Shown here: positions 48,050 through 58,830 of the stretch, piece by piece
Layout of the letters: the number at the start of each line of letters is the position of its first letter
Position numbering within the stretch: position 1 is the first letter of the stretch
Assembly: GCF_000143415.4 (NCBI RefSeq)
Contig: NW_003314276.1
Span: forward strand, 1,075,434-1,139,433
Length of the DNA stretch: 64,000 nt
Direction of reading: 5' to 3'
DNA from: Selaginella moellendorffii
Lineage: Eukaryota; Plantae; Lycopodiophyta
Position numbers and translations under genes: made by a program
Notes under the pieces: generated by a model
Told to the model about the DNA's origin: nothing
The model's input: the letters and a program-made list of their open reading frames with translations, nothing else
Database searches by the model: none

Positions 48050-50118
48050 CGCTCCCAAGCTCGATTCTTCCTCCCGATCGATCGATGAGGTGCTACGATC
48101 GCACGCGAGAATCGCGTGGAAATTGGGTGCTCTGTTCTTCCCCTTGTGTGGCGGCGAATTTCCGGTCCCCGCGTAATGCACGTCAATGTAGCTCTCGCTC
48201 TCACAATCGCGAGCGCTGCGATCGCTCACGCCGCCCTGGCCGCCACCACCGACACGAAATGTGAGCTAATGCAGCATCGCCGGGGCCCAAATCCGCACTT
48301 GGGCGCTGCCAATTCGCCCCGAAATCGATCGAATTCTCGCGCTTCCTGCTCGTGGGCCGTCGCGGCGCGAGCGTTTCTGCCCAGCCAAGACGAAGATTTT
48401 CCCTCGACTGGGAGCAAAGGAAAAAGCAAACGCCTCGCGGCTCGCGAGAGAGTGGAGTGAAAAAAATCGGCTAAAAACTAGGCTTTGCTTCTCTCCACAA
48501 TGAGGGAAGACCAAAGAGTAGAGGCGGCCCCCTTAGAGGCACAGCCTCTTTGGACCGCGCCAGGCGCATCCGACGGTCAAGGCGACGACACGTCGCTGGC
48601 CAAAGCAAAGGAGAAGATTCTCGCGCCTGCTGTCGTGGCGCCCGGCTATTGCGTCTCTCCCGGCTTCTCCGATGCCCGGCAACTTCGCAAGCCATAGCAT
48701 GATCGAATCGGAGGGGCACGGGATTCCCACGTGGACGAATCGCGTGCGATGATGACGTGGTGTGCTGTCATCCCCGTGGCGGCGGGGGTTTGGTGAGGCA
48801 ATGCTGCCGTGGCTTGCCACGACGGACGTTGATGTGGACGTGGCCAAGGTTATAAAGTCCAAGCTGGCGCGTGGACTGACTGGACTAGCGTTGACTCTCT
48901 ACTTTTCATGTTTACTTCGAAGCTTCATGTCATAGCTTCCTTTTGCCGACTTTGAATGGTCGTATCACTATGAAGCTGCAGTGTAGCTTCATCGTGGAAG
49001 CTTTTTTTCTTGTGGGAAAAGAAAATACATTTCCCCAATCCTTGTGTATGTGAATCTCCACAAGCCGTCGTAGAAGATCCTACTTACAAGTTACATGCTT
49101 TTCCACGTCTCTCGTGTCTCCAAACTACGACAACGCACACACACACCTTTGTAGATAGATAAATAGATAACTGTTTATGAAGGTCATGGAGATAAAAACG
49201 AAAGAAAACAAGAGTAAAACGATGGCTTTGAATTTTACCCATCGCACAAAAAAATAAAGATTTGATCACATCGACTCCTCTCTCTCTCTGTGCTTGATTG
49301 ATGTCAAGCAAGGATAGAAAGCGGCAATTTGTGCAAAGTTTAGACACGCAAGGATGATCGTTAGGTGTGTGACCACAAGGGATTCGCATTTCTTCTTTCT
49401 TTTATCTCGGCGGCCATGTCATTACGGAAATCCATGGGTGACACGGCACGACGACCACGGCAGCCAATCCCCGCCCTTGGCGCCTTTTACACGACACGTA
49501 TTCCAGAGTTGACCCGGAAGCTACGAGGTCAGCCACGGTCAACCCCGCGTTCTAAGGAGCTTTCTAGGGCTGGCTTCGCCAAACAAACTACCACAAGTGA
49601 GGATTCATCTGGGTTTGGTAACGCTCTGGTTTAACAAGAAAAAGCTTTTGCTTTGTTGGTGAACTAACGGACAGCACAGGTTTGGTCGTCTATAACACTT
49701 GGCATTTTAAAAGGTCCACGTATATAACCAAAGGTATATTCGTATACTGTAGAAAGGAAGGGAATAAATCTAAATAATAAACTAGATTGCAACCAAGGAT
49801 AAGATCAACAACGTGTTACTTATATCCTCCATGCAAAGCAAAGGAACAAAAAAAGAGACTGTGGTGGAGGAATTGGGGGTCCAGTGTGACATCACAAATC
49901 ACGCCAACAATTGGCAATTTGGCGGGCGGATTTTAAGTGGAACTCTCTTCTGTGACTATGCTCTTCTGCATCTATCTATCTTTCTTTCTTTCTTTTTCTC
50001 ACTCTCACTCATTCATGCATTTATTAGTATAATTTACAATAATAGCTGGGTAGATTGTTCCACAGGAAAATTTATTATTGATATAGAATAGTGTTTTTTG
50101 GAATTTTTTTTTGGATTT

Positions 50119-51015: not shown

Positions 51016-52491
51016 CCCAATTGTTTCTAAATCAAGCAATCGATCGATCGAATCTCCTACAATGGCCACATTGTCACCTAGATCGCAGCGAGATTGGCGC
51101 ATACCTTTCAAGTCTCTGCTCGATCAATCAATGTGGATCGGAGGATCGAAGAAAACGAAGTCGCCTGAGTGTGAGAGCGCGCTCCTCTCTGCTCGATCGT
51201 GCAATGTGGGGAGGAATTGGAGTGGCGATTTTGGGGAATTAGGTGAAGTGGGGGTGTCAAGAGTGGAGAATTAGGCGAAACCAACCATCGCCATCCCCGC
51301 GATTTACCCTTCGTGCGACTGCGGCAAAATGTAGGAAGCTACCGCACCCGAAAATTCCATACCGCGATCGATCACTCACGATTTCGCGCGCCGAGGGAGA
51401 GTTCTAGTGCGGCGATAAAACCATGACGATTCCTGGCAAATCTAGGGCGCAAAAGAAGAGAAAGCCGTGGCTGCTACCGCCTCCTCCATCATTGGTGAGG
51501 AACGAGAGCACTGAGGAAGAGGGAGACGTACGGAATGTGACCGGCTGGAGCCGGTTTGCCCGCGGGAGAGATTCTCCATTTTCATGCCACGTCATGAGCT
51601 TTATGGACGGCGGCGGACCAGGTACTCTTTTGGCCGTGGGGCTGACGTGGCAAAAGCGACCCAAATAATTGGCCAGTGGAGGACCCTTTCAAAGTTATGA
51701 ATTTGGGATTACAAGGCTTTAGAGGAAGAGAACTGGACGAGGTCTTTTCTCTTTGATTGTTTGACCCAAAGACAAATTTTTTTTAAAAAAAATTTAATTT
51801 TTTTTTTTTTTGTTTTTTGTTTTGGCGCTGAGAGATTGAGTGCTTGGTTCGTGCTGCTGGTCCCCCCGAAAGATTGGGCCTTTCCCCTTTTTTTAATTTG
51901 GCGAGAGAGCAAATGCGGTGTCGTAGCTATCAAAGCCAAAACGAACGAGAACAAAATTGGAAAAGCCGAGCGTACTACATTAGATTGCGAGCTAAACTAC
52001 ACGCAAGAACGACGAGCCATCCAATTCCAGGCTCCAAAAGTGGCAAAGGATCGCATATAGATATAATACTTTGGGGAAGTGGAAGCTCCTAGCCCCCTTG
52101 GGCTGGAAATCTGGAAAGGGAGAATCTCTAGAGAGGAGCTAAAGCTGTGAGAAGCCTTTGCACGTACGGGAAAGAAGAATTGGAGGCTGGGAGATGAGCT
52201 AGGTATCGCTATTGCAAACATGACTCACTCTGATCATGAGCAGCGATCAAGAGCCACATTGTGGAGTTCTCATTCCATCTCCAATTCGTCACAGCAAATG
52301 GTTTGGGACCAGATTACCATAAGCTTGGTCGATTCCCTGGCAATCTGCCCTTAAGCCATGGATCATCGGTGTTGGAGATGAAAGGTTTGCTCTTTGACAC
52401 GTGGCAGACACGTAAGCGCCACGTAGGCAATAAAAGTTTTTAGGGCTTTGGCCGTCATGAGCCCTAATCCAGGGAGAGGGGAGAGCGCGCG

Positions 52492-53059
52492 ATGGCGGAT
52501 CGCAACTACACTGTCCGCACGCGCAAGTTCATGACGAATCGTCTCCTCCTTCGCAGGCAATTTGTAAGTGCCGATCGTCAGTTTTTCGAGCTGATTTAAC
52601 ACGGTTGAGCAGGTCGTGGAGGTTCTTCATCCGGGGCGAGCCAATGTTTCCAAGGTGGGATGGATTTGTAGATTGTTTTCGAGCCTAGGCTAAGAGAATG
52701 TGGGTTGTGGATCGGTCGGACAGGCTGAGCTCCGGGAGAAGCTGGCCAAGGTTTACGAGGTCCGTGATCCCCAGGCGGTGTTCGTGTTTGGGATGAGAAC
52801 CAAGTTTGGCGGCGGAAAGTCGTCGGGATTCGGTCTCATCTACGACTCGGTCGAGGCTGCCAAGAAGTTCGAGCCCAAGTATCGGCTTGTCAGGGTGAGT
52901 GAAGTGAGCTCATGGTTTCTCGACTTGCGCTCTAACTCTGGAAGCTTTTCCCCTTGCATCTTTTGCAGAACGGACTTGCAACCAGGGAGCAGAAGTCGAG
53001 GAAGCAGCTCAAGGAGAGGAAGAACAGGGCCAAGAAGATCCGCGGAGTGAAGAAGGTCT

Positions 53060-53095
<36 letters not shown>

Positions 53096-53165
53096 GATGT
53101 GCTTGCTTGCTCCCATTCAGGTCAAGGCTTCTGGAGAGGCTCAAAAGGCAGGAAAGAAGAAGTGA
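52492..53165 (+). CDS. RPS24: 40S ribosomal protein S24 (eS24), 5 exons
   Basis: [45 protein letters not shown] and [18 protein letters not shown]. Confidence 0.97.
53061..53091 (+). repeat. (CT)n microsatellite in the last RPS24 intron
   Basis: Direct read. Confidence 0.95.
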
Positions 53166-53710
53166 TGTGATTTCCAGGTAGTTTTCTTGAAATTAACCGG
53201 GCTTAGCGCGAGGCTTTCTAAGTCAAAAGAAGAAGTGTCGAGATCAAATGTATTTTCTCTCTCTCGCTTTCTTTCCAAGCGTCAAGCGTCTCGTGGTGTG
53301 TATTTACTTTCCAAGCGTCAAGCGGCTCATGGTCTATGAGTTTTTCGCTGCGTCAAAGGTTATGGATACAAGAGCGGAGATAATTCGTGAAGAACTTCAA
53401 GGTTGAAAAGATTTGGATCCAAAGAAGCAAGACCACCTTTTCTTTGTGTGATCGTGTCTTTCGACTGTCGTGACAATGTATAACATGCGACAACAAAGAG
53501 GAAAGCAATTCTGACAGTGATTTCAATAGGATTTTAGAGAAACCTGCCGGGAGAATGTTCCTGAAAGTTTACATTGAAAATATCTTAATCGATTTCGGAC
53601 CATAGGTTTTTATAGAAAGGTGGGATGGATAGATTTAGCACCAAGCCTTTGTATAAATCCTGAGAAATTCTAAACGTAAAACATCTTTCATTTGATCAAT
53701 CAATTTTCTA

Positions 53711-54289
53711 ATGGCAACTTCAGTGGTGTCTTCCTTGGTATTTTTCTCCTTGTTGGCTCAAGTTTCTGTGGGTTTGCTGGTACAGTACGGTTCCACCACG
53801 GTCGGGAATGGCAATTTCATCCCCTTGAGCAGTACTGACGCGGCCCCCACTGTTGATATCCAAGGATTTGGGAAGAATGGCACTGCTCGTCTTTTCTCGG
53901 TGGTCATGGCGGATCAAAAGGCACTGGTAGCACCAAACAAAGTTTACCCCTACATCAACTTCTGGATCGCAAACATCCCAGCGGGTAGCACTGGTAAGTG
54001 TAGAACAAGACTAAGACAAATCTATTGATCATGGCTTGGCTTTGCAGGAGCTGTGAAGAGCAGCATTTTGGAGCCTTATGTTGCTCCTTCCAATACCAGC
54101 AAGAACATCCCATACCAAAATCCATTCAGTGCAAAGAACCATACTTACGATTTTGTGCTAGTCCCGCAGAGGAATCCCTTGGTGAAGCCCATGGATAGTC
54201 GAATTGTCAACTCGCTGGCGGATATAATTCAGCAGTACCATTGTGGAAGCCCTCTCCAGACTGTCTCCTTCACCACCTCGCTCGCTTGA
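53711..54289 (+). CDS. Divergent PEBP-family (FT/TFL1/MFT-fold) protein with N-terminal signal peptide, 2 exons, 174 aa
   Basis: Intron 53994-54047 (GT-AG, phase 1) joins the two ORFs. The product aligns along FT: L.V.YG...V.NG, P.V.I.G, VM.D, IPA, Y..PS, H...F.L..Q, Y..G.P. Confidence 0.75.
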
Positions 54290-54910
54290 TGTCATTCACT
54301 AAAAAGTTGATATTTATCAACTTAACTTAATGAAATATAATACTTTTCTGTTATATAGATCGATCAAAGAATTAAAACGTGTTCTTCAGTCTCCTGCGAT
54401 TATGTTGATCATGAAAGATGAATCATGAAGCAAACATCCAGCTTCAAACTTCCAAAAATGGGCGTGGTGCGATGTTCTTGTTGATCACAGCGCGCATTCC
54501 ATGAGTTGCAATCATGCACAAGGTTTCGATGCGTGTGCTCCTTGAATCAGGCATGCATGATACGACTGATCCGCCAGTAAGTGTGAAATTTGTCTCCCTC
54601 GACACTTTGTATCACTTGAAATGTCCATGGATTCCAAATTCACACCTCTTGCTGACCACCTGTTTTTTATGCTCGTACCTTCGCAAAACAACATAGCAAT
54701 AGTTCAAGAAAAACAAATGAAAGAAAAAGGACATAGACGTACCGCATACGAGAAGGGACTACGTCCATCCAATTCCAGGCTCCAAATGTTGCCATTCTTG
54801 TCGAGAATTCTATGGCCCGGCCCAGGAGAGACTCTTCCCGTTTAGCCTACAGCTCCTCGTAGTATATACACGCGTTACGTAAAAAGAGGAATGGAGCGAG
54901 AGAATGCCTA

Positions 54911-57900
54911 TTATGCAGGTGCCCTGGACCTTGCGCGATTGATAGCTTGCCTGTAAAGCTCGATGTACTGATCAGCGGAGGAGTCCCAGCTAAAGTCTAG
55001 CCGCATTGTCTTCTTCACAAGCTGTTGCCACCACCCGGGCTTTTCCAAGTAGTACTTGATTGCACGATCTAGTGCGTAGTTCAATCCCTGCGATGCAAAC
55101 AATGGTTTATGGAAAAAATATTTCAGAAAACAGCTAGTTGTACCTGAATTTCGGCCGCCGAGAAGCTAAATCCATTGCGTTTTTCTTCCGGAATCGTCGT
55201 GTCATCGACGTCAAAGACACTGCACAGCACGTAGGACAGCGTCAAGCAGCTCGTCATCATGCATTTGAAGGAGAAAAGAACAAAGAGAAAAGAAAGACCT
55301 GTCATTTAGACCGCCTGTTCTACGTACTACTGGGATGGACCCATATCTCATGGCAATCATCTGCGCGACAAGGAAAGGATCTTCTTAGTTTGACAAGTGA
55401 GAATAGCTACTTGCCTGAGTCAGTCCACATGGTTCAAACACCGATGGAATGACGAAAATGTCCGAAGCCGCGTAGATTGAATGTGCCAAAGGCTCGTCGT
55501 ACTTTAGCAACAACCGCACATCCGAATGGCCTTCAAACTTGTAAGAAAGTTCTTCAAATTCACGCTGTAGTTAAGTAAAATGTCAGGAACTGAAAAGATG
55601 AAAAGAAAGTCACTCGAACGCACCTGAATTTCAGGAACAGGACTAGACCCCAGCAGAACAAATTGTCCACCTTTTTCTGCAGTGTGATATATTGCATGTC
55701 TTATCAAATGTACGCCTTTCTGGGGTACAAGCCTAGTGATGCATCCTATCTGAAATCCTGGTCTTAAAATCTCACAAAACAAGAATAGAAAAAAACTTAC
55801 CAAGGGCCGTTTTTTGTCGACATTTAGTCTCAATTGAGATTGAAGAGAAGCCTTGTTGGCTGCTTTGCCACTCAAATCTTCTGCACTGTATTGGTGCTGC
55901 AGTATAGGATCATATGAAGGATCCCAGGCTTCAACATCAATTCCATTCAAAATTCCATAGAACTTGTTTGAATGTACAGAGAGTGCGACTTGCAGTCCTC
56001 GGCCGGCCTGCACAACAAAGTCGTCAAGTCAAGTCATACGTAGTGATTAATTCTATTCTCAGTGAGTCAGATGTGTACCTCCGGCGCTCTGACTTCTTGA
56101 GCATAAGTTGGAGAAACGGTCGTGACAATGTTTGAGAAAACGATACCTCCCTGAGAATAAAACATGAGAAAAACAGGAGGACTGTAAAAATACCACCTTC
56201 AACAGGTTCACTCTATCATGCATGAAACTGTCCTGCATTCGATCCTGTCTGAATTGCTGCTGCACGTTCAAGCCAAAGGCAGCCAAAGCTGCAGGAGATT
56301 CCGTGCCTTGATACTCAAAATTGTGGCATGTGAATGCCAACCGAGCTGAATTCAATCCTAAAGGAACATAAATGTCCCAATATAATGGTGCCTGAAATGT
56401 GAAGTTAGTCCGAAACCAAGTTACATAAGAGTAAAATACATACTACTGCTGCAGAAGTCCAGTCATGGCTGTGGATTATGTCAGGCCTTTTGTTGCTTTG
56501 CAGAAGAAACTCTAAAGCAGCACGGCAGAAATACGTAAACCTCCTAAAGTCGTCTCTTTCACCATAGACGGTGCGCCTCGTGAAGAAATTTGCCGGATGA
56601 AAGGGCTCAATAAAATAAACAGGGAGACCTGCAAGCGCAAATTGCTCAAGCGTAACAAGTATGACGAGATTCTGGTCACCTTCAACAGTGCCCAGCCAAA
56701 CTTTGTTTTTGAAAGTTTGGTTGTCGAAAAACGATAAAAGCTCCATATCTAGAACCTATCAAGTAGAGATGGCTGAGGGACCGGTAGAAAAAATCAATAC
56801 CTTCAAGTTTTTTATGCGATCGTAATCCATGCAGTCGTATTTGGGAAGGATGATCTCAACCAAGTGGTCTTTCCTTTGCAAGGATCGGCTTAAACCAGTC
56901 ACAACATCCCCCAGGCCACCAACCTGGTAATATCAAGATATCCATCAGACGCTTATACAACCACAATTTTACCTTCGCAACTGGTGCCATTTCTGCTGCG
57001 ATGTGAACAACGTACAGTCCCGGTCTGTGAGTGAAGAATGCAAGAATGAAAAGGAAGCACTCTCATTCCAGACACTAACCTCTTTCGATCGTTGACAAGC
57101 TTCAAGAGACCAGACATGATCTCCTCGTTGCTCTTTTCCTGCAGCTGGACAAATGCATCTCGAAGTCGTGCATCTCTGCGCCATGCCATTAGCCTTAGTT
57201 CCTCGCCATCCTCAACAGTGATAACTTTGTCCAGCATCCACGCATCTATACGAAGATGTATACCCGTCCAGAAATCCCATGGCATTTCTCCTGCTGGAAC
57301 CTGTAATATCCCCGACTTCTTTTCTGATTTCAGACGCTCAAGCCTGGCCTGAAAGCCTTCCACCTCCGCTTGATAAGTTTGCAGCTGTGTTCGTATTTCG
57401 GCATCCGATTCCAGTAGCCGGTGCTGTAACAGCTGAACCTGTTCCTTGAGAGCTTTCTTGTCAGCTTGAGCGTGTTCTAGAAGTATTTTCTGACTCTCGG
57501 CCTGAGCCAATTGCACTAGCAGCTTCTTGACCTGTTCTTGTAGCATGCGGTTCTCCAAAAGTAGCCTATCGTTTGTGCTTCCAACAGCTTCCGAGCCAGT
57601 CGTCGTAGGAGAAAGCTTTTGCTCGGACAGTTTGAATGCTTCTGTAGCTGATAGCTCGGCAACTTGAAGCTCCATTTGCAGCTTACGAATATTTTCCTTG
57701 AGTGTATCGTTTTCAGCCTTTGCGTTCTCGAGGTCCGTAAGGGACACCGTGTTCTCTTCCAGCCTCGACTCTAACGACTGGAGCCTGTCTTGAAGCTCTG
57801 TTTTATCAGTTCGTAGTTGTTTCAGCAGCTCATCCTTGCTTCTCAGATCGGCAAGACTTGATTTCAGTGATTCCACCTCCTCCTCAAATTTAGTACCTTT

Positions 57901-58830
57901 GATACTAGAGCTTTTGGTTGTCAGGGCCTGTTGTTGCGAGTCCTCTTTCTCCTTCAGCTTCTTTTGCAGGATTTGCACCTCGTCCTGGAGCATTTCATTC
58001 TTTAATTTCTCTTGCTCGGCCAGCTTTATCTTTGCACTTGACTCGGCCAGCCTCGTCCGCAACACCTCTACTTCTGCTCGCAAGCTATCCTTCTCCCGGC
58101 GAGATTCCTGGAGGTCTTTGAGCGCTCGAGCTCGGACCTGGTTCAAGAGTAGAATATCTTCAACCAGAACATTTCAATCAGGACGTGAACACGATCGAAA
58201 ACTCAAGGCCTGGGCTATGGTTAAGGACAGTACCCACTTTTTTCGGCTTCTCTGATCATTAGCAGCAGGTCTTCAATGCTAACACTGAAGGACCGCTTCT
58301 CTTCCACGTCCAGACTTTCCTCAGTCTATACAAAAAGAAGGAAGAAAAGAACGTATGAGAAAGTTGGTATTTCAAACTGCTGCTATGGAGAACCTTGGAG
58401 TCCTTCGATGGAAAGAATGGACCGTTTGCCAGCATTTGGACATTCTTCTCTCCCTCGGAGCCCTCATCTCTCGCCTCTTCCGATGGAAAATCCTCGGCAT
58501 CAACCGCGAGACGCTCTCGAGCGCTCTTCTCCGCTTGTAATCTTTTCCTGCGAGGTAGCGAGTCAGAGAAGAGAAAGAAGAAAAGCGAGAAAGAAGGCTC
58601 TACAAGGATTTCGATGGATAATACCTTAGATTCTTGTGGCGCAGCCGGCAGGACGTGAAAACGAGCCTCGGGCATGGATTGCAATGGCCGATCCAGGAGT
58701 CGCCGTGCAGCTTCCTCAAGCTGGCGATGGAGCTGAGCGATCGCGCCGCCGCGACGGTAATCATCCCCCCGGTGGTGAGCGCCATCTCTGTGCTCATCCA
58801 GCGAGAATTTGGGGCGGCATTGGCGATCAT
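54911..58830 (-). CDS. SS4: Starch synthase 4, chloroplastic, multi-exon
   Basis: Transit-like N-terminus, long coiled coil, [56 protein letters not shown] and DFSWDSSA. Confidence 0.93.

What the first reader, a model, noticed from the sequence alone, without database searches (positions are those of the whole stretch)
53711..54289. Apparently secreted, glycosylated PEBP (florigen-fold) protein with a rewritten ligand pocket
Seen: two exons splice into an intact 174-aa ORF with a hydrophobic N-terminus (MATSVVSSLVFFSLLAQVSVG) and three N-X-S/T sequons (NGT, NTS, NHT). Known: plant FT/TFL1/MFT proteins lack signal peptides, have 4 exons, and conserve DPDxP, the His of xLHW and GxHR. Here DPDxP becomes DQKAL, EYLHWLVTDIP becomes PYINFWIANIP and GIHR becomes KNHT, with a short insertion before it. 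Only one phase-1 intron remains, near FT intron 3. Inference: a lineage-specific apoplastic PEBP clade with a non-flowering role such as protease inhibition, lipid binding or extracellular signalling.
Basis: partly seen in the sequence, partly recalled or inferred. Interest (0 to 1): 0.8.

Follow-up and report, generated by a model that had tools for sequence, protein, structure and literature searches.

The report
Secreted-type, pocket-altered PEBP gene in spikemoss
This is an intact two-exon gene for a very diverged relative of the flowering hormone FT that carries an export leader and has lost FT's hallmark pocket motifs; it belongs to a lycophyte-only gene family that plant surveys do not describe, but this copy is almost silent in the RNA data examined and its function is unknown.

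Summary
Window 53711-54289 (+) encodes 174 aa in two exons split by a 54-nt GT..AG phase-1 intron. It has a hydrophobic leader, three N-X-S/T sequons, and DQKAL / YINFW / KNHT in place of DPDxP / YLHW / GIHR.

Pfam PF01161 does not detect it. PEBP homology is nevertheless solid:
- The Selaginella moellendorffii homologue P0002 hits Hd3a/FT directly (E 4.5e-5).
- The family profile finds only lycophyte proteins among 1.84 billion representatives, and four of them pass PF01161.
- An AlphaFold model of a 91%-identical paralogue (pLDDT 86) matches FT (TM 0.76).
- The ESM Atlas single-sequence model of P0002 matches TFL1.

The mature protein is under purifying selection (dN/dS about 0.06), while the leader drifts freely but stays hydrophobic. 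A TATA box is invariant in all copies compared.

Caveats:
- Secretion is inferred from simple rules, not a trained predictor.
- Two RNA-seq runs give 0-2 reads of depth, and no spliced read was seen.
- One public run carries a variant with exon 1 deleted.
- This copy has no protein record.

The scan had already found this family on other pieces of the same genome. I rate it a new variant of a known kind, of moderate interest.

The parts
53652..53658 (+). TATA box (TATAAAT) 53 nt upstream of the ATG
   Evidence: TTGTATAAAT is invariant in the window and in seven S. moellendorffii copies, including the divergent P0001 and P0002 loci.
53711..53993 (+). Exon 1: codons 1-94 plus the first base of Gly95. 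Codons 1-21 (53711-53773) form the hydrophobic leader.
   Evidence: Leader: Kyte-Doolittle 9-residue maximum of 2.4, no charged residue, Ser at -3 and Gly at -1 before Leu22. Leader dN 0.22-0.28 is about equal to dS; mature part dN 0.04 against dS 0.7.
53876..53884 (+). Sequon NGT (residues 56-58) in a surface loop
   Evidence: Conserved as NGT or NGS in P0001-P0004. It lies in a lower-confidence loop of the model.
53912..53926 (+). DQKAL (residues 68-72) in place of DPDxP
   Evidence: Alignments to Hd3a/FT and to the lycophyte relatives.
53951..53965 (+). YINFW (residues 81-85) in place of YLHW; the pocket His is Asn83
53994..54047 (+). Intron, 54 nt, GT..AG, phase 1
   Evidence: A homologous 57-nt intron occurs in the paralogues, about 70% identical. 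P0014 and Diphasiastrum P0013 have a phase-1 intron at the same site. No RNA read confirms the splice.
54048..54289 (+). Exon 2: the rest of Gly95, residues 96-174, and the TGA stop
   Evidence: dN/dS 0.05-0.08 against paralogues.
54092..54121 (+). 10-residue insertion (residues 110-119) starting with sequon NTS
   Evidence: Absent from subfamilies C and D in alignment A3. Model pLDDT there is about 71.
54134..54145 (+). KNHT (residues 124-127) in place of GIHR. His126 is kept and Arg is lost. It overlaps sequon NHT.
53684..54016 (.). Segment missing in a variant seen in run X1, where 10 nt replace it. It covers the 5' UTR, all of exon 1 and 23 nt of the intron.
   Evidence: A 768-nt contig whose flanks are about 99% identical to the window (tables 5, 5c and 8).
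54440..54545 (+). Decayed remnant of the first exon of an LTP-like gene. It is the partner gene of the ancestral duplicated unit.
   Evidence: blastn hit to L002 15684-15770. The alignment shows a 10-nt gap and a stop codon. The L002 ORF is PF00234.

Best explanation
The locus is an intact, TATA-driven, two-exon gene of a lycophyte-restricted branch of the PEBP (FT/TFL1/MFT-fold) superfamily.

Shown here:
- The product has the PEBP beta-core.
- It lacks the roughly 25-residue N-terminal arm and the C-terminal tail of FT.
- A hydrophobic leader stands where that arm would be.
- DPDxP has been replaced (only the Asp is kept), the YLHW His is Asn, and the GxHR Arg is lost.
- A 10-residue sequon-bearing loop has been added at the pocket wall.

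Inferred:
- The leader is a cleavable signal peptide, cut near Gly21/Leu22.
- The protein therefore enters the ER, is N-glycosylated on the two exposed-loop sequons, and leaves the cell. It has no HDEL/KDEL, no second hydrophobic segment and no GPI-like tail.
- It cannot act as a cytosolic 14-3-3/FD co-regulator.
- It probably no longer binds phosphate-type anions.
- The most likely role is as a non-catalytic extracellular binding protein whose remodelled pocket and loops recognise a different partner: a small apolar ligand, or a secreted hydrolase.
- It may act together with the LTP-like secreted proteins whose genes alternate with it in tandem arrays.

This particular copy is a dispersed duplicate whose LTP-like partner has decayed. 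It is expressed at most at trace level in the samples examined.
For: Homology:
- P0002 against PDB: Hd3a 4.5e-5, FT 3.6e-4.
- Window exon 1 alone against Hd3a: 0.028.
- Profile A1 reaches P0007, P0010 and P0011 at 1e-13 to 1e-9 and P0013 at 6e-4 among 1.84e9 proteins. These four pass PF01161.
- Profile A2 against Hd3a: 7.7e-23 over the full length.

Fold:
- AlphaFold model with pLDDT 86 and pTM 0.85.
- Foldseek: FT at TM 0.76, E 3.8e-9.
- Atlas: FT cluster at TM 0.78.
- Independent ESM model of P0002: TM 0.71 to the TFL1 cluster. Its feature neighbours are arthropod secreted PBPs and PEBP4.

A live gene:
- dN/dS 0.10-0.12 at dS 0.53-0.62.
- The leader evolves at omega about 1 but stays hydrophobic, while the mature part is at omega about 0.06.
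- Invariant TATA box.

Secretory character:
- Leaders are present in subfamilies A, B, C and D.
- Subfamily C has a conserved Cys pair.
- The three sequons are conserved.

LTP linkage.
Against: - PF01161 gives no hit for either exon or for P0001/P0002.
- No trained signal-peptide predictor was available. The leader has no basic n-region.
- In the two raw RNA-seq runs, depth over the gene is 0-2 reads against 500-1000 for the neighbouring RPS24 gene. At least one of those reads is a paralogue cross-match.
- The only contig that crosses the intron is unspliced, at depth 5.
- A variant lacking exon 1 exists.
- The protein is absent from a 5.8-billion-protein collection.
- There is a single unpaired Cys in the mature protein.
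- No evidence bears on the ligand or partner.
- The structure model's alignment contained a near-canonical PEBP, which favours that fold. The ESM model does not have this bias.
Confidence: 0.6

Rival explanations
1. This copy is a silent, dispensable duplicate on its way to becoming a pseudogene. The family is functional, but this locus no longer contributes.
For: - Depth is 0-2 reads in two RNA-seq runs, and the only intron-crossing contig is unspliced.
- A variant with exon 1 deleted exists in a sequence about 99% identical.
- The LTP-like partner has already decayed.
- There is no annotated protein record.
- Many paralogues exist.
Against: - The ORF, splice sites and TATA box are all intact.
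- dN/dS is 0.10 over dS of about 0.55, so most of its history was under constraint.
- Only two RNA samples of unknown tissue were read, and only 12% of each.
Confidence: 0.25
2. The leader is an uncleaved signal anchor or a sorting signal. The protein would then stay in the endomembrane system, tonoplast or vacuole rather than reach the apoplast.
For: - The uncharged hydrophobic stretch runs from residue 5 to 24.
- No positive n-region sets the orientation.
- Vertebrate PEBP4, a feature neighbour, is reported from memory as membrane- or lysosome-associated.
Against: - Residues 22-27 align with the first beta-strand of FT/Hd3a and are modelled as a strand. The h-region is therefore only about 12 residues, followed by small residues at -3 and -1.
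- The leader's sequence drifts freely, as cleaved signal peptides do.
Confidence: 0.12
3. It is an intracellular MFT/FT-like regulator, and the hydrophobic N-terminus is incidental.
For: The nearest solved relatives are FT, Hd3a and TFL1.
Against: - The N-terminal arm of FT is replaced by a leader in all four lycophyte subfamilies.
- The DPDxP and GxHR motifs and the pocket His are lost.
- The sequons are conserved.
- The sister subfamily has a conserved Cys pair.
Confidence: 0.03

Closest known systems
Plant EuPEBPs (FT/Hd3a, TFL1/CEN, MFT)
   Same: - They share the fold: TM 0.75-0.78.
- They are the best sequence matches in the PDB.
- They share the core strands, the IP(G/A) turn, the Y-x-P turn, the pocket Asp, the GxHR His and the following Tyr.
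- A phase-1 intron lies close to the site of FT intron 3. The 62-bp and 41-bp exon rule is taken from PMC7151754.
   Different: - It has a hydrophobic leader instead of the N-terminal arm.
- It has no C-terminal tail.
- DPDxP reads DQKAL, the YLHW His is Asn, and the GxHR Arg is Thr.
- It carries a 10-residue insertion and three sequons.
- It has two exons, not four.
- PF01161 does not score it.
- Published surveys list only MFT-like genes in lycophytes (PMC8408984, PMC13370220).
Other lycophyte leader-bearing PEBPs: S. moellendorffii 'protein D2', '26 kDa secreted antigen-like' and 'FT-like' (P0007, P0010, P0011); P0014; Diphasiastrum complanatum P0013
   Same: - They have an N-terminal leader and the YxxYW/ANIPG core.
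- They are significant profile hits.
- P0014 and P0013 have a phase-1 intron at the same site.
- P0014 groups with the window's subfamily at 100/100 support.
   Different: - P0007, P0010 and P0011 keep the pocket His and pass PF01161. They have a Cys pair and no sequons. P0010 is intronless.
- P0013 keeps YVHW and GIHRY.
- The window's subfamily and P0014 sit on a very long branch.
Animal secreted PEBPs (vertebrate PEBP4, arthropod 'conserved secreted protein', nematode TES-26/Ov16 type)
   Same: They combine a PEBP fold with a signal peptide. They are the nearest clusters by protein-language-model features (score 0.91). RefSeq's automatic names for the sister genes borrow from TES-26.
   Different: There is no evidence of orthology, since plant PEBPs score higher than animal ones. 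From general knowledge, the animal proteins keep the canonical pocket motifs. The resemblance is probably convergent acquisition of a leader.
Yeast Tfs1p (carboxypeptidase Y inhibitor, PDB 1wpx)
   Same: It is a PEBP fold used as a stoichiometric protease inhibitor. It was hit by profile and by fold.
   Different: Tfs1p is cytosolic and, from memory of the 1wpx work, uses its N-terminal segment in inhibition. That segment is absent here. The match is far weaker than to FT.

Membership tests
PEBP domain family (Pfam PF01161 PBP) | Score above the PF01161 gathering threshold (24 bits) | tested here: not met
   No hit at E<=10 for either exon of the window gene or for the full-length homologues P0001 and P0002. 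Sister lycophyte proteins P0007, P0010, P0011 and P0013 do pass.
PEBP superfamily (fold level) | PEBP beta-sandwich fold, matched to solved PEBPs | tested here: met
   A model of P0003:103-257, which is 91% identical to the window protein, has pLDDT 86. The top 48 Foldseek hits are all PEBPs or mL38, with FT at TM 0.76. The Atlas FT cluster matches at TM 0.78. The ESM model of P0002 matches the TFL1 cluster at TM 0.71.
PEBP superfamily (sequence homology) | Statistically significant sequence similarity to bona fide PEBPs | tested here: met
   P0002 against Hd3a gives 4.5e-5. Profile A1 against Hd3a gives 7.9e-4. A1 reaches the PF01161-positive relatives at 1e-13 to 1e-9. Profile A2 against Hd3a gives 7.7e-23.
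Plant EuPEBP (FT/TFL1/MFT) | DPDxP motif | tested here: not met
   The motif reads DQKAL at residues 68-72; only the Asp is kept.
Plant EuPEBP (FT/TFL1/MFT) | GxHR motif | tested here: not met
   The motif reads KNHT at residues 124-127; only the His is kept.
Plant EuPEBP (FT/TFL1/MFT) | Pocket His of the (Y/H/W)LHW segment | tested here: not met
   The segment reads YINFW, with Asn83 at the His position.
Plant EuPEBP (FT/TFL1/MFT) | Four exons, with 62-bp and 41-bp exons 2 and 3 (PMC7151754) | tested here: not met
   The gene has two exons of 283 and 242 nt. The one intron is phase 1 and lies within a few residues of where FT intron 3 falls. That placement rests on my recollection of FT's 198-nt first coding exon.
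Plant EuPEBP (FT/TFL1/MFT) | Cytosolic protein without a signal peptide; binds 14-3-3/FD | not testable with these tools
   A hydrophobic leader is present. Localisation and binding need experiments.
Secreted (signal-peptide) proteins | Cleavable N-terminal signal peptide | tested here: inconclusive
   Only heuristics were applied: a 12-residue h-region, Ser at -3 and Gly at -1, no other hydrophobic segment, and a fast-drifting but always hydrophobic leader. No SignalP-type predictor was available.
Animal PEBP4 / TES-26-type secreted PEBPs | Orthology (shared descent of the secreted form) | not tested
Plant PEBPs outscore animal ones, which argues against orthology.

The most novel reading that the evidence does not exclude
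Lycophytes turned the florigen fold into an extracellular protein family of at least four subfamilies and dozens of copies. These genes would have been co-amplified with LTP-like genes as a two-gene secreted module. The remodelled, glycan-flanked pocket would bind a new class of ligand or partner in the cell wall or apoplast, for defence, cuticle or spore-wall lipid handling, or cell-to-cell signalling. That would be a second, non-cytosolic career of PEBPs in plants.
Probability: 0.2. Interest if true: 0.75.

Novelty: new variant of a known kind. Interest (0 to 1): 0.5.

Why it matters
Plant PEBPs are studied almost only as cytosolic, phloem-mobile regulators (FT, TFL1, MFT). Surveys state that lycophytes have MFT-like genes only. 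A leader-bearing, motif-less, purifying-selected PEBP branch in Selaginella, with a less derived relative in Diphasiastrum, shows that the fold was recruited to the secretory pathway in an early vascular-plant lineage.

It also gives a natural series from a canonical to a heavily remodelled pocket. That series could show which pocket features are needed for which PEBP activities. Finally, it warns that motif- or Pfam-based PEBP censuses miss real family members.

Tried and rejected
- **Pfam on the exons and on P0001/P0002:** no PBP hit.
- **First AlphaFold run:** with only the 7-row family alignment it failed, at pLDDT 38.6. It was replaced by an 18-row lycophyte alignment.
- **Weak tblastn hit at window 48350-48631 (E 0.72):** read and dismissed as noise. 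The window therefore holds a single copy.
- **Third word-indexed protein search with profile A2:** it returned almost only the input family and no canonical MFT/FT sequences. As a result, a joint tree with MFT/FT/TFL1, PEBP4 and YbhB could not be built from reference-able sequences.
- **Sequencing-run search:** no run on record as RNA holds the stretch.
- **Read laying:** no spliced joint was found for this gene.
- **Literature searches:** searches for secreted or signal-peptide plant PEBPs and for six SELMODRAFT locus tags found nothing relevant.
- **Tfs1-like protease inhibition as the main mechanism:** considered and not favoured, because the N-terminal arm is absent.

Full report
**1. What is in the sequence**

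Window 53711-54289 on the + strand holds a two-exon gene.
- Exon 1 runs from the ATG at 53711 to 53993.
- A 54-nt intron (53994-54047, GTAAGT...GCAG) splits a Gly codon in phase 1.
- Exon 2 runs from 54048 to the TGA at 54287-54289.
- The product is 174 aa.

tblastn finds only this one copy in the window. A marginal hit at 48350-48631 is noise.

Exons were searched apart, by reference. Natural full-length homologues served as proxies.

**2. Is it a PEBP?**

Pfam says nothing. There is no family at E<=10 for either exon, nor for the full-length S. moellendorffii homologues P0001 and P0002. Homology is nevertheless well supported by four lines of evidence.

(a) Direct sequence matches.
- phmmer of P0002 against PDB sequences gives Hd3a 4.5e-5, FT 3.6e-4 and TFL1 2.6e-3. 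The alignment starts exactly after the leader.
- Window exon 1 alone gives Hd3a 0.028.

(b) A chain of intermediate relatives.
- A profile of the close family (A1) was scored against 1.84 billion representatives and found just ten proteins, all from lycophytes.
- Among them, S. moellendorffii P0007, P0010 and P0011 scored E 1e-13 to 1e-9, and Diphasiastrum complanatum P0013 scored 6e-4.
- These four pass the PF01161 gathering threshold.

(c) The wider lycophyte profile. Profile A2 hits the following over the full domain:
- Hd3a at 7.7e-23, FT at 3e-21 and TFL1 at 7e-20;
- animal PEBP1 at about 1e-17;
- mL38 and Tfs1p more weakly.

(d) Structure.
- The first AlphaFold run used only 7 close sequences and failed, at pLDDT 38.6.
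- With the 18-row lycophyte alignment A3, the domain of P0003 gave pLDDT 86 and pTM 0.85. This domain is 91% identical to window exon 1 and 90% to exon 2.
- Foldseek's best PDB matches are FT (6igh, E 3.8e-9, TM 0.76), Hd3a, PEBP1 and TFL1.
- The nearest ESM Atlas cluster is 'Flowering locus T' at TM 0.78.
- Alignment A3 contains a near-canonical PEBP, which could bias the fold. The ESM Atlas's own single-sequence model of P0002 (pTM 0.77) is a useful independent check: it matches the 'Terminal flower 1' cluster at TM 0.71.
- Its language-model neighbours are arthropod 'conserved secreted protein' PBPs and vertebrate PEBP4.

**3. Motif states**

In A2/A3 and the PDB alignments, the following are retained: the Asp of DPDxP, the Tyr before the pocket His, the IP(A/G) turn, the YxxP turn, the His of GxHR and the following Tyr.

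The following are lost: both Pro and the second Asp of DPDxP, the pocket His of YLHW (Asn83) and the Arg of GxHR (Thr127).

A 10-residue insertion (110-119), beginning with the NTS sequon, sits just before KNHT. It is modelled as a lower-confidence loop.

The relatives form a graded series:

| Relative | DPDxP position | YLHW position | GxHR position |
|---|---|---|---|
| Diphasiastrum P0013 | DLDSS | YVHW | GIHRY |
| Selaginella subfamily C | DRRAS | YVHYW | QHKY |
| Window's subfamily A | as described above | as described above | as described above |
| Subfamily B (P0014) | Asp lost as well | not recorded | His lost as well |

A maximum-likelihood tree groups A with B at 100/100 support, on a very long branch.

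**4. Secretory character**

No trained predictor was available, so this is inference.
- The leader has no charged residue, a roughly 12-residue hydrophobic core, and Ser and Gly at -3 and -1 before Leu22.
- Residues 22-27 align with, and are modelled as, the first strand of the PEBP core. The leader therefore replaces FT's N-terminal arm rather than adding a membrane span.
- There is no other hydrophobic segment.
- Leaders are also present in P0001, P0002, P0004, P0014, P0010, P0007 and P0013.
- Against the S. moellendorffii paralogues, leader codons have dN 0.22-0.28, about equal to dS. The mature part of exon 1 has dN 0.04 at dS 0.7. This is the usual signature of a cleaved signal peptide.
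- The three sequons are conserved in P0001-P0003.
- Subfamily C has no sequons but has a conserved Cys pair: one in a strand, one as the last residue.

**5. Is the gene alive?**

Evidence for:
- dN/dS is 0.10-0.12 against six cluster copies at dS 0.53-0.62. Both exons are constrained in the predicted frames.
- The junction peptide matches the paralogues.
- The intron is more diverged than the exons (38-39 of 54 nt identical).
- A TTGTATAAAT box 53 nt upstream of the ATG is invariant in all eight loci compared. These include the P0001 and P0002 loci, whose upstream regions are otherwise unalignable.

Evidence against, or at least cautionary:
- In two stranded raw RNA-seq runs, 12% of each read, depth over the gene is 0-2. 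The RPS24 gene 700 nt upstream has 500-1000 and is cleanly spliced.
- At least one of the few reads over the gene is a paralogue cross-match.
- No spliced joint was reported for this gene.
- The only contig crossing the intron (run X2, 53975-54104, exact match, depth 5) is unspliced.
- Run X1 contains a 768-nt contig with flanks about 99% identical to the window. In it, 53684-54016 (5' UTR, exon 1 and the start of the intron) is replaced by 10 nt.
- This 174-aa protein has no record in the 5.8-billion-protein collection.

The family is clearly under selection. This particular copy may be tissue-specific, barely expressed, or on its way out.

**6. Genomic context and origin**

In S. moellendorffii scaffolds GL377586.1 and GL377596.1, three copies per scaffold alternate with LTP-like genes (PF00234/LTP_2) next to an HSP90 gene.
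- Each copy is a two-exon, 174-aa gene with its own leader.
- The 257-aa record P0003 is an LTP-PEBP fusion artefact of annotation.
- These copies differ from each other by dS 0.03-0.13, and from the window copy by about 0.55.

The window copy lies between an RPS24 gene and a convergently transcribed starch-synthase gene. The starch-synthase 3' UTR reaches to about 54316.

About 150 nt downstream of the stop, the window keeps a decayed piece of the LTP-like gene's first exon, at 54440-54545, with a 10-nt gap and a stop codon. So a [PEBP-like, LTP-like] unit was duplicated to this site, and only the PEBP-like half survived.

An LTP_2 gene also lies 2.3 kb from P0001. None lies near P0002.

**7. 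Intron evidence for descent from plant PEBPs**

- The window gene, P0014 (subfamily B) and Diphasiastrum P0013 all have a phase-1 intron a few residues after the IP(A/G) turn. P0010 is intronless.
- Plant PEBP genes have four exons, with 62-bp and 41-bp middle exons (PMC7151754).
- With FT's 198-nt first coding exon (my recollection), FT intron 3 is phase 1 in codon 101. That is within three aligned residues of the window's intron, in a loop with indels.
- This fits loss of introns 1 and 2. It is an inference, not a test.

**8. Literature**

- Bennett and Dixon 2021 (PMC8408984) found a single MFT-like clade in lycophytes. They note that more divergent EuPEBPs might have been missed.
- A 2026 orchid study repeats that S. 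moellendorffii lacks FT- and TFL1-like genes.
- Searches for signal-peptide, apoplastic or secreted PEBPs in plants, and for six locus tags of this family, found nothing.
- Only automatic names exist: UniRef 'PEBP-like protein', and RefSeq '26 kDa secreted antigen-like', 'protein D2' and 'FT-like'.
- Earlier notes of this scan had already flagged the family on other pieces of the same genome, which they identify as S. moellendorffii. My data agree: run contigs match the window exactly, and the paralogue clusters are as those notes describe.

**9. Verdict**

It is unproven on localisation and function, and weakened for this copy by near-absent expression.

The locus is best filed as a new variant of a known kind: a PEBP-superfamily homologue that fails the motif, Pfam and gene-structure definitions of FT/TFL1/MFT.

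The most likely mechanism is a secreted, N-glycosylated, non-catalytic binding protein with changed pocket specificity. Confidence by claim:
- PEBP fold: about 0.95.
- Entry into the secretory pathway: about 0.8.
- This copy is functional today: about 0.65.
- Any specific ligand or partner: at most 0.3.

Noticed in passing
window 54440-54545 (+): Decayed remnant of the first exon of an LTP-like (PF00234) gene. It aligns to the start of the LTP-like gene that follows each PEBP-like copy in the S. moellendorffii tandem array, and it carries a 10-nt gap and a stop codon.
   Followed up: partly
window 53684-54016: Run X1 (organism A) holds a 768-nt contig about 99% identical to the flanks. In it this segment, which includes all of exon 1, is replaced by AGATTAAGAT. 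This is a presence/absence variant of the gene.
   Followed up: partly
window 52489-53055 (+): Ribosomal protein S24e gene, highly expressed and spliced. About 80% of the RNA reads laid on it are only 90-95% identical. A more strongly expressed paralogue or allele therefore exists elsewhere.
   Followed up: no
window 54316-58146 (-): Starch synthase gene: a PF08323 catalytic domain at 56408-56746, preceded by a 397-aa coiled-coil-looking ORF at 56953-58146 (SS4-like by eye). Its 3' UTR runs to within about 30 nt of the PEBP-like gene's stop, so the two genes converge.
   Followed up: partly
L001 8001-9164 (GL377586.1) and L002: The database proteins P0003, P0004 and P0005 are mis-joined gene models. 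P0003 and P0005 fuse an LTP-like N-terminus to the PEBP-like gene, and P0004 and P0005 run on into unrelated sequence. The real units are 174-aa two-exon genes, each with its own leader.
   Followed up: yes
L003 6001-6877 (Diphasiastrum complanatum CM055103.1): The leader-bearing but near-canonical PEBP P0013 has three exons. It has the shared phase-1 intron in codon 109 and an extra phase-0 intron after codon 139, which to my knowledge is not a canonical plant PEBP intron.
   Followed up: no
window 53054-53100: (GA/TC)n simple repeat downstream of the RPS24 coding region. The read-laying tool skipped it as a repeat.
   Followed up: no
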